A stretch of DNA of 63,652 nucleotides, counting the filler, from Octopus bimaculoides (Eukaryota): the NCBI RefSeq assembly GCF_001194135.2. It is 9 parts of 9 records of this genome, joined end to end, with 100 filler letters (N's around TTAATTAATTAA, not from the genome) between each part and the next. Parts side by side here need not be neighbours in the genome. Positions count along the whole stretch, not along the records: positions 49,153 to 54,457 come from NW_026400370.1; 8 more parts are not named here. The stretch is one strand, 5' to 3'. Of this stretch, positions 49,053 through 54,557 are shown piece after piece (the first letter of the stretch is position 1; each line of letters starts with the position of its first letter). A program made the position numbers and the translations under genes. The notes under the pieces were generated by a model. That model saw nothing but the letters and a program-made list of their open reading frames with translations. It made no database searches and was not told the DNA's origin.

Positions 49053-50189
49053 NNNNNNNNNNNNNNNNNNNNNNNNNNNNNNNNNNNNNNNNNNNNTTAA
49101 TTAATTAANNNNNNNNNNNNNNNNNNNNNNNNNNNNNNNNNNNNNNNNNNNNAACCATGTGGTTGGTAAGCAAGCTACTTACCACACAGCCACTCCTGCC
49201 TCTACGGTGATGAAAATGATAATGCTGATGATGAGGATAATGGTGCTAACAATCATAAAAATCATTATCATCACCAAGAAGATGTTGAAGAGGACGATGT
49301 TCATGATGCAGTTGACGATGATGATGAAGTTCGTGATGATACTGATGATGACGATGAAGACGTTGATGACGATTATAATGATGACGTTGACGGCGATGAT
49401 AAAGTTCGTGTTGATGATAATGATGATGATATAAATGATGGCGATGATCATGATGATGATCATGGTAATGATATTAATGATGAGGTTATGATTATGATGA
49501 TGACAATGATAATGTTGAAGAAGATGAGTAAGATCGTGATGATGATGATGATGATCATCATCATCATAGTGATGATAAACAGGATGATGACGATAATAAT
49601 AATGCGGATGATAAAGATGGAAATGATGATGATGATGATGATGATAATGATGATGAAGATGAAAATAATGAAGATGGTGCAAATGATGAAGATAAGCCGA
49701 TGATGACGATGATGAGGCTTATGATGAGGATTATGACGAAGATTATGTTGATAATGATGAAGATGATGATCATAGACATGACCATGATAATGATAATGAT
49801 GATGATGATGAAATGCTAATGCTGATCATGACAATCATGATAATGATTATGGTAATGAAGTTGATGATGATGATTGTATTATTGTGATAAACATCAAATA
49901 AAGAAGAATCTGAAAAAGGTGAAGAAGAAGAAGAAGGGAAAGAAGAATAGGAAGGAGGAGGAGCGAAGGAAGAAGACGAAGAAAAAGAAGAAGAAAAATA
50001 ATAAAGAATGTGAAGGAGGAGAAAAAGGAGTTGGAGAAAAAGAAGCTGGAGAAGAAGAAAAAAGAAAAAAAGAAGAAGAAGGAGGAGGAGCGAAGGAAGA
50101 AGAAGAAAATAATAAAGAATGTGAAGGAGAAGAAAAAGGAGTTGGAGAAAAAGAAGCTGGAGAAGAAGAATGAAAGCAAGAAGAAAGCT

Positions 50190-50350
50190 GATTATAAATG
50201 TCTTATTTATATGAATGAGAAAAATTGGCAAATGATTTAATATTAAACATTGAGAATTATATCGTGAGTGAAAGAGTCTGAAGAAAACAGAAGAGGCAAC
50301 TTACAATAATATGGAATAATAATATGGAATAGTTTCATAGATACAATATT
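50190..50350 (-). pseudogene. Array unit with the LRR exon body and acceptor deleted
   Basis: The donor GTAAGT (forward acttac, 50299-50304) and its flank are intact. Only AAT of the exon remains before the sequence jumps to the distal acceptor flank (gaatagtttc). Confidence 0.75.
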
Positions 50351-50554
50351 CAAGAAGATGAAGAAGAAAGAAGGGGAGGAGCGATGGAACAAGAAGAAAA
50401 AGAGTAGTAGAAGAAGAAGAAGAAGAAGAAGAAAGCAGATTACATATGTCATGTCTTACTAATATGAATGCAAAAAATCGGCAAATTATTTAATATTAAA
50501 CATTGAGAATTATATCGTGAGTGAAAGAGTCTGAAGAAAACAGAGGCAACTTAC

Positions 50555-50626
50555 AATTCTTTTAAATTGTAGAGATTTGCAAACCATCCAACTTTGATCT
50601 CCGTAATTCGATTCCGGTTAAGTTTT
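50555..50626 (-). CDS. 72-nt LRR exon E4: (L)KLNRNRITEIKVGWFANLYNLKE(L)
   Basis: tttttataatgcAG|A AAA CTT AAC ... AAA GAA TT|GTAAGT. Phase 2 at both ends, open frame. Confidence 0.88.
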
Positions 50627-51550
50627 CTGCATTATAAAAAGGAGAAGTTTAGAAATAATACGGAATAGTTTCGTGATACAATGTTCAATACTGAGTGATA
50701 AGAGTGAGTGGAAAATGGAGAATAATTAGGAGGATGAGGAAGAACGGAATATGAAGATGGTGATGATAATGGGATTCTGATGATGATATTGGTGAAGCTG
50801 GTTGTGTTGGTGAACATCATGTTGGTAAGGATGATGATGATGAAAGAAGAAGAAGAAGAAGAAGAAGTGAAGGAAAAACAAAAAGAAAGAATATGATGAA
50901 GAAAAATGAGTAGTAGAATAATAAGAAGGTATAGGAGAAAGAGAAAAAGAAGAAGAAAGAAGAACGAGAAGAAGAAGCGAAGGAAAAACAAAAAAAGAAT
51001 ATGATGAAGAAAAATGAGTAGTAGAATAATAAGAAGGTATAGGAGAAAGAGAAGAAGAAAGAAGAATGAGAAGAAGAAGAAGAAGAAGAAAGAAGAACGA
51101 GAAGAATGGGAGAAAAAGAAGAAGAAAAAGAAGGAAAAACAAAAAGAATATGATGAAGAAAAATGAGTAGTAGTATAATAAGAAGGTATAGGAGAAAGAG
51201 AAGAAGAAGAAGAAGAAAGAAGAACGAGAAGAAGAAGAAGCGAAGGAAAAACAAAAAAAGAATATGATGAAGAAAAAAGATTAGTAGTATAATAAGAAGG
51301 TATAGGAGAAAAAGAAGAAGAAGGAAAAACAAAAAGAAAGAATATGATGAAGAAAAAAGAGTAGTAGTATAATAAGAAGGTATAGGAGAAAGAGAAGAAG
51401 AAGAAGAAGAATGAAAGCAAGAAGAAAGCAGATTACATATGTGTTACTAATGTGAATGAGACAAATTGGCAAATGATTTAATATTAAACATTTAAACATT
51501 GAGAATTATATCGTGAGTGAAAGAGTCTGAAGAAAACAGAGGCAACTTAC

Positions 51551-51622
51551 AATTTTTCTAAACTGTAGAGATTTGCAAACGATACATCACTGATGTCTTG
51601 AATTTGATTGCCGTAAAGATAT
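51551..51622 (-). CDS. 72-nt LRR exon E3: (L)YLYGNQIQDISDVSFANLYSLEK(L)
   Basis: ccttttgtaatgcAG|A TAT CTT TAC ... GAA AAA TT|GTAAGT. Phase 2 at both ends, open frame. Confidence 0.88.
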
Positions 51623-52768
51623 CTGCATTACAAAAGGGGCACGTTTGGAAATAATATATGATGTGGCTGATGCCTCAGATGAAAATGATGCTGGAGATGA
51701 TGATGAAGATCGTGATGATTCTGCTGATAACGATGATAACGATGTAGATGATGAAAAATATGGTGATGATCGTGATGATTATGATGAGGATGATGGTAAT
51801 GATGATGATGATGAAGCTGATGTTGACGATCAGGATGGTGATTATGATGTTGATGGATGAAGATAGAGTCTATGTTAATGATGGCTATGATGATAACGAT
51901 GATAAAAGTTGATAAAGATGAATAAGACCATGATGATAATGTTGAATGCTCATGATGAAGATGATGATAATGATGACGCTCATGTCGATGATGATAAAGA
52001 TGCAAATGATGATGATGAAAATCCCGATGATGATAATGATTAGGATAAAATAATGATTATACTGATGAAGAAAAAGCCGATGATGGAGATAATAATGATG
52101 AGGAGTAGGGGGGATTATGATGAAGATGATGATGATAGACATGGTCATGATGATGACAATGATGATGAGGAAACAATTGCAACGCTGATCAGGACAACAA
52201 TGAAGATGATGATGGGAATGGAGACGACACTAATGATTATAATATTATGATAAATGACGAATGAAGGAGAATCGAAAAAAAGGTGAAGAATAAGAAAAAA
52301 GGACAGAAGAAGAAGAAGAAGAAGGTTAAAAGGAAGAGGATGGAGGAGAAGAAGGAGGAGCTATGGAAGAAGAAGAAAAAGAAGAAGAACGAGAAGAAGA
52401 AGAAGGAGAAGAATAATAATAAGAAGAAGACTAAAAGGAAGAAGGAGGAGCTATGGAAGAAGAAGAAGAAGAACGAGAATAATAATAAAAAGAAGAAGAC
52501 TAAAAGGAAGAAGGAGGAGCTATGGAAGAAGAAGAAGAAGANNNNNNNNNNNNNNNNNNNNNNNNNNNNNNNNNNNNNNNNNNNNNNNNNNNNNNNNNNN
52601 NNNNNNNNNNNNNNNNNNNNNNNNNNNNNNNNNNNNNNNNNNNNNNNNNNNNNNNNNNNNNNNNNNNNNNNNNNNNNNNNNNNNNNNNNNNNNNNNNNNN
52701 NNNNNNNNNNNNNNNAATATGAAGATGGTAATGATGAAGCATATTCTGATGAATATTATGCTGCTGAA

Positions 52769-53078
52769 GTGGAGGCGCAATGGCCCAGTGGTTAGCGCAG
52801 CGGACTCGCGGTCATAGGATCGCGGTTTCGATTCCCAGACCGGGCGTTGCGAGTGTTTATTGAGCGAAAACACCTAAAGCTCCTCGAGGCTCTGGCAGGG
52901 GATGGTGGCGAACCCTGCTGTACTCTTTCACCACAATTTTCTCTCACTCTTTCTTCCTGTTTCTGTTGTGCCTGTAATTCAAAGGGTCAGCCTTGTCACA
53001 CTGTGTCACGCTGAATATCCCTGAGAACTACGTTAAGGGTACACGTGTCTGTGGAGTGCTCAGCCACTTGCATGTTAA
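52769..53078 (+). mobile_element. SINE family C inserted in the LRR array intron
   Basis: tRNA-like head GGAGGCGCAATGGCCCAGTGGTTAGCGCAGCGGACTCGCGG...GGTTTCGATTCCC. The body matches 38875-39152. Confidence 0.9.
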
Positions 53079-53126
53079 TTATATCGTGAGTGAAAGAGTG
53101 TGAAGAAAACAGAAGAGGCAACTTAC

Positions 53127-53198
53127 AATGTTGTCAAATTGTAGAGATTTGCAAACGCTCCATCACTGATGTCTGTAATTTGATTCCCGGCAAGATTT
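53127..53198 (-). CDS. 72-nt LRR exon E2: (L)NLAGNQITDISDGAFANLYNLTT(L)
   Basis: ccttttataatgcAG|A AAT CTT GCC ... ACA ACA TT|GTAAGT. Phase 2 at both ends, open frame. Confidence 0.9.
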
Positions 53199-54243
53199 CT
53201 GCATTATAAAAGGGAAAAGATTAGAAATGATATAGAATAGTTTCGTGATACAATATTCAATATTGAGTGATAAGAGTTAGAGGAATATGGAGATTAATTA
53301 GGAGGATGAGGAAGAACGGAATATGAAGATGGTGATGATGAAGAAGATTCTGAAGAAGATTATGCTGATGATGATGATTATGACGGTGATCTTGATGATG
53401 GTAATGGTGACAATGATGACCATGATGATGGTGACAATGATGGTGTTGATGAAGATGTAGTTGATGATGAGAATGATTATGATGTTGAGGACGTTGATGA
53501 TTATGATAATCTGTTCGTTTTGATGAGAGTGTTGCTTATGATGAAAGTGGTGGTGGAAATGGTGAGGATAATGATGATGATGATAATGATAATGATGATG
53601 AAGTTCGTATTGATGATAATAATGATGACGATGATTATGTTTTAGATGATGAAACTGACGTGGATGATGAAGATCGTGATCATTAAGATGATGATGATGA
53701 TGATGATAATGATGAAGTTGATGAAGATGAGTGAGCTCGTGACGATGATGATGTTGATCTTGGTTACTATGGTGATGATAAACACGATGACAATGATACT
53801 GATGACAAAGATACAAATGATGATGACGATGATGATGATAATGATGCCGATCATGACGAAGATCGTCATGATGATAATAATAATGATGATGATGAGGATT
53901 ATGACGAAGATTATGATGATAATGATTAAAATGATGATGATCATAGACATGGTCATGATAATGAGAATGCTGCTTCTGATTATAATGATGATGAAATGTT
54001 AATGCTGATTATGACAATCAAGAAGATGATGATGGTAGTGAAGATGATGATGATCATAATATTGTGATAAATATCAAGTGAAGAAGAAGAAAGGAGAGAA
54101 GAAAAAGAAGAAGAAGAAGAAGAAAGCTGATTACATATGTCTTATTTACGTGAATGAGACAAATCGGTAAATGATTTAATATTAAACATTGAGAATTATA
54201 TCGTGAGTGAAAGAGTCTGAAGAAAACAGAAGAGGCAACTTAC

Positions 54244-54315
54244 AATCTTTCTAAACTGTAGAGATTTGCAAACGATCCATCTTTGATGTCGGTAATTTGA
54301 TTGTAGGAAAGAGAT
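54244..54315 (-). CDS. 72-nt LRR exon E1: (L)SLSYNQITDIKDGSFANLYSLER(L)
   Basis: ttctaatcttctcccttttataatgcAG|A TCT CTT TCC ... GAA AGA TT|GTAAGT. Has a CTAAT branch-like motif. Phase 2 at both ends, open frame. Confidence 0.9.
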
Positions 54316-54557
54316 CTGCATTATAAAAGGGAGAAGATTAGAAATAATATAGAATAGTTTCGTGATACGATATTCAATATTGAGTGATAAGAGTTAGAGG
54401 AATATGGAGAATAATTAGGAGGATGAGGAAGAACGGAATATGAAGATGGTGATGATGNNNNNNNNNNNNNNNNNNNNNNNNNNNNNNNNNNNNNNNNNNN
54501 NTTAATTAATTAANNNNNNNNNNNNNNNNNNNNNNNNNNNNNNNNNNNNNNNNNNNN

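What the first reader, a model, noticed from the sequence alone, without database searches (positions are those of the whole stretch)
50555..54315. Cassette variation concentrates on the predicted ligand-binding (concave) face
Seen in sequence: 9 of 23 codons are identical in all four exons, including TTT GCA AAT CTC TAC, and the donor flanks are almost identical. Purely synonymous differences occur at only 3 codon positions, while 13 positions vary in amino acid. Five of the six sites with 3 or more residue states are x positions of LxxLxLxxN: S/N/Y/K, S/A/Y/N, Y/G/G/R, E/T/E/K and R/T/K/E. All 11 nucleotide differences between E1 and E3 fall in codons that change the amino acid. Established: these x positions line the concave beta-sheet and are the hypervariable sites of VLRs and plant NLR LRRs. 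Inference: diversifying selection on a recognition surface, pointing to an immune or allorecognition receptor. The sample is only four exons.
Basis: partly seen in the sequence, partly recalled or inferred. Interest (0 to 1): 0.85.

Follow-up and report, generated by a model that had tools for sequence, protein, structure and literature searches.

The report
Young LRR exon array, variable concave face
Four recently duplicated 72-base exons each encode one turn of a leucine-rich-repeat protein, and they differ almost only at the five residues per turn that line the binding surface; this pattern is real and already known from other LRR exon arrays, but nothing here shows an immune role.

Summary
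On the minus strand lie four 72-nt exons, E1 54315-54244, E2 53198-53127, E3 51622-51551 and E4 50626-50555. Each is bounded by AG and GTAAGT, sits between phase-2 introns, and encodes one 24-residue 'typical' LRR (Pfam LRR_8, E=8e-45). They belong to at least six tandem exon+intron units of about 1 kb. Four are intact, one has lost its exon, and one is probably hidden in the assembly gap. The gap lies in an intron and breaks no exon.

Variation is concentrated on the five x codons of LxxLxLxxN: 12 of 15 nucleotide columns vary, against 13 of 57 in the rest of the exon (p=8e-5). Non-synonymous difference there is about 0.60, against 0.04-0.13 in exon-proximal introns and 0.14-0.26 in deep intron. 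The rest of the exon diverges no faster than the introns.

The selection signal is therefore real, but it rests on 4 exons and 5 codons. It is also confounded, because the units exchange sequence: the flanks are mosaic, and a 51-54-nt donor flank is identical in four units. Within-exon dN versus dS is not significant on its own. The immune or allorecognition reading is untested. Brown-algal ROCO 72-nt LRR exon arrays already show this pattern.

The parts
54244..54315 (-). E1, a 72-nt one-LRR exon, translated (L)SLSYNQITDIKDGSFANLYSLER
   Evidence: Searches give the AG/GTAAGT bounds, the open frame and the split Leu codon TT|A. One search matches the spliced four-exon protein to Pfam LRR_8 at E=8e-45.
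53127..53198 (-). E2, a 72-nt one-LRR exon, translated NLAGNQITDISDGAFANLYNLTT. It carries the only N-x-T sequon (NLT).
51551..51622 (-). E3, a 72-nt one-LRR exon, translated YLYGNQIQDISDVSFANLYSLEK
50555..50626 (-). E4, a 72-nt one-LRR exon, translated KLNRNRITEIKVGWFANLYNLKE. It is the most divergent copy.
54114..54243 (-). Donor-side intron flank of E1. The proximal 54 nt (54190-54243) are identical to those of E3, E4 and the exon-less unit. The homologous flanks lie at about 53077-53126 (E2, cut short by the insert), 51420-51550 (E3), 50425-50554 (E4) and 50175-50304 (U5).
   Evidence: There are 0 differences over 51-54 nt among E1, E3, E4 and U5, then 11-16% divergence over +61..+130 (p=5e-4).
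54316..54457 (-). Acceptor-side intron flank of E1, cut by the edge of the piece. Homologues lie at 53199-53340 (E2), 50627-50768 (E4) and 51623-51658 (E3; only about 36 nt are homologous).
   Evidence: E1 and E2 differ at 4 of 129 positions; E1 or E2 against E4 differ at 10-12 of 129.
50170..50352 (-). U5, an exon-less unit. The donor flank is intact, but the 72-nt exon and about 26 nt of acceptor are replaced by a 13-nt duplication (ATTCCATATTATT on the minus strand), leaving an orphan GTAAGT.
52542..52772 (-). The assembly gap (52542-52715) plus the 57 nt after it, which are the distal tail of an acceptor flank. This is the probable site of a hidden further unit.
   Evidence: One search aligns the tail to E2's flank from +122 onward. 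One search shows a 69-nt-period GAA-rich minisatellite with 96% matches running up to the gap.
52773..53076 (+). A G+C-rich (about 50%) insert of about 300 nt in the intron upstream of E2's donor flank. It looks like a SINE, with a tRNA-like head and A-box/B-box-like motifs, and lies antisense to the gene. In this unit it replaces the distal donor flank and the trinucleotide arrays.
   Evidence: Searches give the sequence and composition. One search shows an outer 7-bp acceptor-like stem. ARAGORN and Rfam do not recognise it, so the SINE reading is an inference.
49281..50185 (.). Example of the intron body: a decayed (GAT)n array (49281-49874) followed by a decayed (GAA)n array (49921-50185). 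The same pair recurs at 51685-52168 / 52285-52541 and 53323-54054. E3's intron has a 580-nt GAA-rich minisatellite at 50844-51426.
   Evidence: GC skew up to +0.88. The GAT/GAA junctions of three units align at 14-26% divergence.

Best explanation
The piece is an internal segment of a minus-strand eukaryotic gene for a 'typical' 24-residue, extracellular-type leucine-rich-repeat solenoid.

Each turn of the solenoid is encoded by its own 72-nt exon, flanked by phase-2 introns. Exon and intron were amplified together as a tandem unit of about 1 kb. At least six units are visible: four intact, one hidden in the gap and one that has lost its exon. The units are young and still exchange sequence. 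Scaffold residues, the convex face, most synonymous sites and the exon-proximal introns are nearly identical between them.

Against that background, the five solvent-exposed positions of the beta-strand (the x's of LxxLxLxxN) have been replaced almost to saturation in every repeat. I infer that selection favours different residues on the concave ligand-binding face as turns are added, so the array builds and retunes a binding surface.

Shown here: the exon structure, LRR identity, tandem-unit homology, site-specific excess of replacement, and mosaicism of the flanks.

Inferred: that the excess is adaptive, that the concave face binds a ligand, and that all four exons are spliced into one mRNA.

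Not shown: any immune or allorecognition function.
For: Exon structure and LRR identity:
- The exon anatomy and frame are identical in four copies. Only the minus strand is open; plus-strand ORFs are translations of low-complexity sequence.
- Pfam LRR_8 matches at E=8e-45.
- The best solved-structure matches are animal ectodomain LRRs: IGFALS, LGR5/LGR4, LRRC15, LRIG1 and TLR13/TLR3.

Unit homology:
- It covers exon, both flanks and deep intron.

Site pattern (NG86):
- Concave codons have mean pN 0.60, other x codons 0.23 and scaffold codons 0. Exon-wide pS is 0.035-0.16.
- Concave codons have 12/15 variable columns against 13/57 in the rest of the exon (p=8e-5).
- Concave pN exceeds the pooled proximal flanks plus synonymous sites in all six pairs (p=6e-3 to 8e-9). 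It exceeds the harshest proxy, deep intron at 0.26, in three of six pairs.
- P(12 or more of 15 columns variable) is 2e-3 or lower even at a neutral per-column variability of 0.40.
- Non-concave exon sites vary no more than the flanks.

Recent shared ancestry rather than ancient repeats:
- Scaffold codons interleaved at 3-nt spacing with the variable ones are identical down to the third base (CTT x4, AAT x4, CTC x4, TT|A x4). Conversion tracts could hardly produce that pattern.
- Old arrays do not show the concave-versus-convex contrast.
Against: - The sample is four exons and five codons, and the pairwise comparisons are not independent.
- Whole-exon dN versus dS is not significant. At the 7 fourfold-degenerate sites there are already 3 changes (read from the codons), so the synonymous rate may be higher than the flanks suggest.
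- The flanks are not a neutral clock. The donor-proximal 51-54 nt are perfectly conserved even in the exon-less unit, and the distal flank shows all three incompatible 2:2 splits. Intron similarity therefore partly reflects homogenisation.
- Deep intron divergence (14-26%) equals whole-exon divergence.
- There are no transcript data, no orthologue, no allele, and none of the rest of the gene.
Confidence: 0.55

Rival explanations
1. Concerted evolution plus purifying selection. The repeats are old and each has its own functionally fixed concave residues. Gene conversion or unequal crossing-over between units keeps erasing differences in the introns and the rest of the exon. Selection rejects any exchange that would overwrite the concave codons. 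The contrast then reflects homogenised surroundings, not accelerated change.
For: - The flanks are mosaic. In the donor flank, columns 367-409 plus the TCT indel support E1U5|E3E4, E1E3|E4U5 and E1E4|E3U5.
- The acceptor flank groups E1 with E2 (3% divergence), whereas the exon's 3' end groups E1 with E3.
- The orphan donor flank of exon-less U5 is identical to E1's over 54 nt, and shares the TCT state with E1 and E2 rather than with its neighbours E3 and E4.
- Proximal flanks are much more similar than deep intron.
- Differences in concave codons are often 2-3 nt per codon, close to saturation.
- A precedent for repeats with concerted evolution plus hypervariable interaction sites is the Podospora WD40 non-self recognition genes (PMC1805685, found; abstract only read).
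Against: - Variable and invariant codons alternate at 3-nt spacing (codons 0-5, 21-23). Third bases of the invariant ones are identical in all four copies. Normal conversion tracts could not homogenise codon 2 without overwriting codons 1 and 3.
- Exon-wide pS (0.035-0.16) matches the flanks, which suggests the whole exon shares the flanks' recent ancestry.
Confidence: 0.25
2. Alternatively spliced cassette array. Every exon is 72 nt, symmetric in phase (2/2) and carries the same splice sites, so any subset can be joined in frame. The invariant 51-54-nt intron segment after each exon is a splicing control element. The gene would then produce many LRR surfaces from one locus, as reported for brown-algal ROCO genes, or Dscam-like. 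This reading can coexist with either explanation above.
For: - Exon symmetry and identical splice sites in all four copies.
- The donor-proximal intron has 0/51 variable columns, against 12/63 just beyond (p=5e-4).
- Alternative splicing of one-LRR 72-bp exon arrays is reported in Ectocarpus ROCO genes (PMC11378527).
Against: - No transcript evidence.
- There is no docking/selector-type complementarity. No inverted repeat links the flanks, and the E1 unit folds no better than shuffles (z=-0.14).
- The invariant flank is also kept by the exon-less unit, where it has no exon to regulate. That fits homogenisation better than function.
Confidence: 0.12
3. Decaying or non-functional array. The units are relics, and the exon differences are relaxed-constraint drift.
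For: - One unit has lost its exon.
- A SINE-like insert and large unstable trinucleotide arrays fill the introns.
- No annotated protein containing these exons was found among 5.8 billion proteins.
Against: - There are no non-synonymous changes at 8 scaffold codons in four copies, while adjacent codons are near saturation.
- All four frames and all eight splice sites are intact.
- Drift cannot make concave codons change faster than intron.
Confidence: 0.05
4. VLR-like donor cassettes used for somatic assembly of a receptor gene.
For: The only support is the general resemblance: LRR modules in tandem with hypervariable concave positions.
Against: - Each module is a complete 24-residue repeat bounded exactly by a canonical acceptor and a GTAAGT donor, all in the same phase. 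These are ordinary exons.
- No reverse-strand or partial cassettes occur in the piece.
Confidence: 0.02

Closest known systems
Brown-algal (Ectocarpus, Saccharina) ROCO 'type I' LRR exon arrays (Zambounis et al. 2012, PMC3341825; PMC11378527)
   Same: One LRR per 72-nt exon in uniform phase. Tandem exon amplification ('exon shuffling'). Inactivated exons left in the introns. Positively selected or hypervariable sites on the concave face. In-frame alternative splicing is possible.
   Different: - The repeat class differs. Ectocarpus has GxxPxxLxxxxxLxxLxLxxNxLx; this array has LxLxxNxIxxIxxxxFxxLxxLxx with no GxxP.
- The split codon appears to sit differently. The brown-algal paper describes nucleotides 3-71 as coding; here nucleotides 2-70 are.
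- No reverse-strand cassettes are seen here.
- The composition (33% G+C) and the SINE-like inserts do not suggest a brown alga; this is my inference.
- A ROC-COR domain cannot be checked from this piece.
Tetrahymena 90-bp LRR exon arrays (PMC6564038)
   Same: Tandem arrays of exons of exactly equal length, separated by phase-2 introns. The first base of each exon completes a 'junction' codon begun by the last two bases of the previous exon. The arrays are young and rapidly expanding, and ectopic recombination is invoked.
   Different: The exons there are 90 bp, not 72 bp, the organism is a ciliate, and there are thousands of genes. No concave-site analysis was compared here.
Vertebrate LGR4/5/6 and glycoprotein-hormone receptor ectodomains
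   Same: They are among the best solved-structure matches (LGR5 E=6e-44, LGR4). They have 24-residue typical LRRs. Their LRR exons are of similar size and all in phase 2 (stated for the gonadotrophin receptors in PMC11378527 citing Koo et al. 1991). That LGR4-6 have 72-bp exons is from my own knowledge.
   Different: Their repeats are ancient: all x positions are equally diverged, and the introns are not similar to each other. A 7TM domain cannot be checked here. LRR sequence similarity is mostly shared consensus, so the match does not establish orthology.
Lamprey/hagfish VLR cassettes and plant NLR/RLP LRR domains
   Same: Hypervariability falls at the solvent-exposed x positions of the beta-strand on the concave face (established knowledge; restated in PMC3341825).
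   Different: VLR cassettes are assembled somatically and lack splice sites. Plant LRR domains are mostly not split one repeat per exon, and their diversity is between alleles or paralogues. Here the comparison is between repeats of one gene, and the exons have canonical splice sites.
Podospora HNWD/HET WD40 repeats (PMC1805685)
   Same: Repeats within a gene are kept highly similar by concerted evolution, while a few interaction-surface positions are hypervariable. This is the model for the main rival explanation.
   Different: The fold is WD40, not LRR, and there is no exon-per-repeat structure. I read only the abstract.

Membership tests
Leucine-rich repeat, 'typical' 24-residue class | Repeat LxxLxLxxNxLxxLxxxxFxxLxx of 24 residues, recognised by LRR profile models | tested here: met
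   All four repeats fit L.L..N.I..I....F..L..L with a period of exactly 24. Pfam LRR_8 E=8e-45 and LRR_4 E=5e-31.
Leucine-rich repeat, 'typical' 24-residue class | Solenoid with x positions of LxxLxLxxN on the concave beta-sheet | not testable with these tools
   Structure prediction accepts only contiguous window translations of 30 aa or more. The assignment rests on gap-free alignment to the solved LGR5 and IGFALS structures and on established LRR geometry.
One-LRR-per-exon amplified arrays (Ectocarpus ROCO type) | Each LRR on its own 72-nt exon, in uniform intron phase | tested here: met
   Four exons of exactly 72 nt. All introns fall after the second base of a Leu codon.
One-LRR-per-exon amplified arrays (Ectocarpus ROCO type) | Type I motif GxxPxxLxxxxxLxxLxLxxNxLx | tested here: not met
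   There is no GxxP. Phe at position 15 and the NQITDI core indicate a different LRR class (compared).
One-LRR-per-exon amplified arrays (Ectocarpus ROCO type) | Excess replacement at concave-face sites | tested here: inconclusive
   The excess is strong relative to the flanks. However, within-exon dN versus dS is not significant, there are only 4 exons, and no site-model test was possible.
One-LRR-per-exon amplified arrays (Ectocarpus ROCO type) | Inactivated cassettes in the introns, some on the reverse strand | tested here: inconclusive
   One same-strand unit has lost its exon. No reverse-strand copy occurs within 3 mismatches.
One-LRR-per-exon amplified arrays (Ectocarpus ROCO type) | ROC-COR GTPase domain downstream of the LRRs | not testable with these tools
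   The piece ends inside the array on both sides.
LGR / glycoprotein-hormone receptor | Rhodopsin-type 7TM domain after the LRR ectodomain, plus LRRNT/hinge | not testable with these tools
   This lies outside the 5.3-kb piece. No related annotated protein was retrieved.
VLR-type somatic assembly cassettes | Cassettes without splice signals, often partial modules, flanking an incomplete germline gene | tested here: not met
   All cassettes are whole modules bounded by AG and GTAAGT.
Dscam-type mutually exclusive exon cluster | Docking-site/selector RNA complementarity in the flanking introns | tested here: not met
   No inverted repeats link the flanks. The unit folds no better than shuffles. 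A docking site outside the piece cannot be excluded.
Immune or allorecognition receptor | Polymorphism or paralogue diversity under diversifying selection, immune-cell expression, signalling domain | not testable with these tools
   No alleles, paralogues, transcripts or other domains are available. Metagenome scans found no related DNA.

The most novel reading that the evidence does not exclude
An animal gene, possibly from a cephalopod (an untested lead), carries a germline array of interchangeable, phase-symmetric one-LRR cassettes with invariant splice-site flanks and hypervariable concave residues. It uses them combinatorially by alternative splicing, and renews them by unit turnover, to make a repertoire of LRR binding surfaces. 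That would be an LRR counterpart of Dscam and of the brown-algal ROCO system, acting in invertebrate recognition.
Probability: 0.1. Interest if true: 0.8.

Novelty: new member of a known kind. Interest (0 to 1): 0.42.

Why it matters
If the signal holds in the full locus, this would be an animal example of a mechanism described so far in brown algae and ciliates. In that mechanism a binding surface grows and is retuned by amplifying one-repeat exons, with change focused on the ligand face. It would give a concrete candidate for a fast-evolving recognition protein in a lineage whose recognition repertoire is poorly known.

The locus is also a clean natural test case for separating positive selection from concerted evolution within a repeat protein. 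Introns, synonymous sites, scaffold codons and surface codons can all be compared inside one locus.

As it stands, this is a fragment with four exons and no functional context.

Tried and rejected
- Protein database search with the spliced 97-aa product. It gave only three weak bacterial LRR hits and no source-gene or close eukaryotic relative, so no paralogous cassettes could be collected.
- Exhaustive representative search. A single exon gives at most 26 aa of open frame, so structure prediction was not possible either.
- Two metagenome scans, one for the donor-flank 28-mer and one for the SINE-like 25-mer.
- RNA-structure or docking-site idea for the invariant flank. There are no inverted repeats between flanks (one search failed on a strand parameter), and the fold z-score is -0.14. 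Rejected within this piece.
- tRNA or Rfam identification of the G+C-rich insert. Nothing was found. Only an acceptor-like outer stem appears.
- Plus-strand coding. ORFs of 50-262 aa are translations of the GAT/GAA arrays (poly-D/E/K/M/I) broken by stops. Rejected.
- Literature search for sequence strings of the two SINE-like elements, to fix the taxon. It returned 0 papers. Cephalopod LRR searches found nothing specific.
- The bacterial promoter/terminator scan is irrelevant here.


Full report
**What is there**

The piece (49153-54457) is A+T-rich at about 33% G+C, and its plus strand is strongly purine-rich. On the minus strand the same short module occurs four times. It reads ...TTTTATAATGCAG | 72 nt | GTAAGTTGCC.... 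The exons are E1 54315-54244, E2 53198-53127, E3 51622-51551 and E4 50626-50555.

In each copy the first base completes a Leu codon begun by the last two bases of the previous exon (TT|A). All introns are therefore phase 2, and any exon can follow any other in frame. Only this strand and frame are open. Plus-strand ORFs are translations of trinucleotide arrays.

Spliced together, the four exons give LSLSYNQITDIKDGSFANLYSLER LNLAGNQITDISDGAFANLYNLTT LYLYGNQIQDISDVSFANLYSLEK LKLNRNRITEIKVGWFANLYNLKE. That is four exact 24-residue 'typical' LRRs. Pfam LRR_8 matches at E=8e-45. The best solved-structure matches are animal ectodomain LRRs: IGFALS, LGR5/LGR4, LRRC15, LRIG1 and TLR13/TLR3.

Every count reproduces:
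- Nine invariant codons.
- Thirteen amino-acid-variable positions.
- Synonymous differences at three positions.
- Six positions with 3 or more residue states, five of which are the x's of LxxLxLxxN (S/N/Y/K, S/A/Y/N, Y/G/G/R, E/T/E/K, R/T/K/E).
- Eleven E1-E3 differences, all in codons that change the amino acid.

The donor flanks are indeed almost identical.

**The gap**

The N run 52542-52715 sits in the intron between E2 and E3. It is 920 nt from E3 and 411 nt from E2, so it breaks no exon or frame.

It is not innocuous, though. On the plus strand every unit reads (GAT)n - (GAA)n - donor flank - exon - acceptor flank. The sequence left of the gap is a (GAA)-rich minisatellite with a 69-nt period and 96% matches. 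The 57 nt right of the gap align to the distal part of the acceptor flank, from +122 onward.

A whole unit, with or without its exon, is therefore most likely hidden there. It would need more than the 174 N written. Four exons is a lower bound, and E2-E3 adjacency is unproven.

**The array**

Units are homologous over exon, both flanks and deep intron. A further unit, U5 (about 50170-50352), keeps a perfect donor flank. It has lost the exon and about 26 nt of acceptor, which are replaced by a 13-nt duplication.

E2's unit carries a G+C-rich SINE-like insert of about 300 nt (52773-53076) in place of the distal donor flank. ARAGORN and Rfam do not call it a tRNA. It has an acceptor-like outer stem.

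At least six units are visible, and the piece ends inside the array on both sides.

**Is the variation concentrated, and is it faster than neutral?**

I took the five concave codons as an a-priori class.

Concentration within the exon:
- Twelve of 15 nucleotide columns vary there, against 13 of 57 in the rest of the exon (Fisher p=8e-5).
- Nei-Gojobori pN averages 0.60 at the concave codons, 0.23 at the other x codons and 0 at the eight scaffold codons. Exon-wide pS is 0.035-0.16.

Exon against intron:
- For E1, E2 and E4 the exon has 22/72 variable columns against 13/129 in the acceptor flank (p=4e-4).
- For E1, E3 and E4 the exon has 22/72 against 12/114 in the donor flank (p=8e-4).
- The non-concave part of the exon is no more variable than the flanks.
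- Pair by pair, concave pN exceeds the pooled proximal flanks plus synonymous sites in all six pairs (p=6e-3 to 8e-9).

The pattern is also not the trivial consequence of 'x means variable'. In four consecutive repeats of IGFALS and LGR5, taken from the alignments, concave and other x positions have about the same number of states (3.4-3.8 against 3.1-3.2). Here the figures are 3.6 against 1.8. The concave sites are as diverged as in ancient arrays, while everything else looks young.

**Why the inference is still only partly secured**

1. Within the exon alone, dN versus dS is not significant in any pair (one-sided p 0.09-0.46). There are only about 15 synonymous sites, and 3 changes already sit on the 7 fourfold-degenerate sites (read from the codons).
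2. The flanks are not a clean clock. The first 51-54 nt of the intron after each exon have 0 differences among E1, E3, E4 and the exon-less U5, while the next 63 nt have 12 variable columns (p=5e-4).
3. Deep-intron junctions of three units differ by 14-26%. That is as much as the whole exon (15-25%). Against that harshest proxy, only three of six pairs remain significant for the concave codons. P(12 or more of 15 variable columns) is still 2e-3 or lower at a per-column variability of 0.40.
4. The units exchange sequence. In the distal donor flank, all three possible 2:2 splits of E1, E3, E4 and U5 occur within about 45 nt. U5 shares the TCT indel state with E1 and E2 rather than with its neighbours. 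The acceptor flank pairs E1 with E2, while the exon's 3' end pairs E1 with E3.

Part of the intron similarity is therefore homogenisation. The main rival explanation is concerted evolution with selective retention of old, repeat-specific concave residues.

I favour recent duplication with accelerated replacement. Invariant scaffold codons are interleaved with the variable ones at 3-nt spacing and are identical to the third base in all copies (CTT, AAT, CTC, TT|A). Conversion tracts could hardly achieve that without overwriting the neighbouring codons. Both readings require selection for repeat-to-repeat difference on the concave face.

Neither reading shows diversifying selection between alleles or paralogues, which is what an immune or allorecognition claim needs.

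**The invariant donor flank**

Its conservation could mean a splicing element, and the symmetric exons could be used as alternative cassettes. I found no complementarity between flanks, and the unit folds no better than shuffled sequence (z=-0.14). The exon-less unit also keeps the element, which fits homogenisation better than function. This remains open without transcripts.

**Comparison with what is known**

- The closest described system is the brown-algal ROCO 'type I' LRR exon array. It has 72-nt one-LRR exons in uniform phase, exon amplification, inactivated exons in the introns, positively selected sites on the concave face and alternative splicing (PMC3341825, PMC11378527).
- Tetrahymena has 90-bp LRR exon arrays with the same phase-2 'junction codon' arrangement (PMC6564038).
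- Gonadotrophin-receptor LRR exons are also all phase 2.

This array is not a member of the ROCO type I class, because its motif differs. Whether it belongs to an LGR, TLR, LRIG or other architecture cannot be told from the piece. VLR-type cassettes are excluded by the canonical splice sites.

The source organism is not established. That is only a lead, and a text search for the string found nothing.

**Verdict**

The feature is real and accurately described, and the site-specific excess of change on the predicted binding face is statistically supported. It belongs to a kind of system already described elsewhere. The sample is very small and is confounded by exchange between units. The functional label (immune or allorecognition) is unsupported.

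Noticed in passing
window 52542-52772: The assembly gap probably hides a whole further exon+intron unit. Before it lies a GAA-rich minisatellite (69-nt period, 96% matches); after it lies the distal tail of an acceptor flank. The 174 N are too few for the roughly 230-330 nt that are missing.
   Followed up: yes
window 50170-50352: An exon-less unit. Its donor flank is perfect (identical to E1's over 54 nt), but the exon and about 26 nt of acceptor are replaced by a 13-nt tandem duplication, leaving an orphan GTAAGT in the intron downstream of E4.
   Followed up: yes
window 54190-54243, 51500-51550, 50504-50554, 50251-50304: The first 51-54 nt of the intron after each exon are identical in four units apart from one 3-nt indel. 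The next 63 nt differ by 11-16% and deep intron by 14-26%. This could be a splicing element or a recent conversion tract; which one is undecided.
   Followed up: partly
window 52773-53076 (+): An insert of about 300 nt at about 50% G+C. Its head resembles a tRNA, with A-box-like TGGCCCAGTGG, B-box-like GGTTTCGATTCCC and a 7-bp outer stem. It is probably a SINE, lies antisense to the gene, and truncates E2's donor flank. ARAGORN and Rfam do not recognise it.
   Followed up: partly
window 49153-49205: The left edge of the piece is non-repetitive sequence. On the minus strand it reads ...GGCTGTGTGGTAAGTAGCTTGCTTACCAACCACATGGTT. I recall this as the head of an abundant octopus SINE. That is from memory only: a literature string search found nothing, so the taxon is untested.
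   Followed up: partly
window 49281-50185, 50844-51426, 51685-52541, 53323-54054: The introns consist almost wholly of decayed (GAT)n and (GAA)n arrays, with higher-order minisatellites of 69-263 nt. This gives extreme strand asymmetry (GC skew up to +0.88), so the transcript would carry long (AUC)n and (UUC)n tracts. Long GAA/TTC tracts are known to be unstable, which may explain the gap and the unit turnover (inference).
   Followed up: no
proteins P0002 and P0003 (Microcoleus LRR proteins): The nearest database hits are cyanobacterial 22-residue LRR arrays. They show the same picture: near-identical repeats (NQITDISFLGSLTNLTTL) that differ mainly at the x positions of LxLxxN. Young LRR arrays seem to look like this in very different organisms.
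   Followed up: partly
window 53127-53198 (E2): Only E2 carries an N-x-T glycosylation sequon (NLT, positions 20-22). It is created by one of the variable concave-side residues.
   Followed up: no
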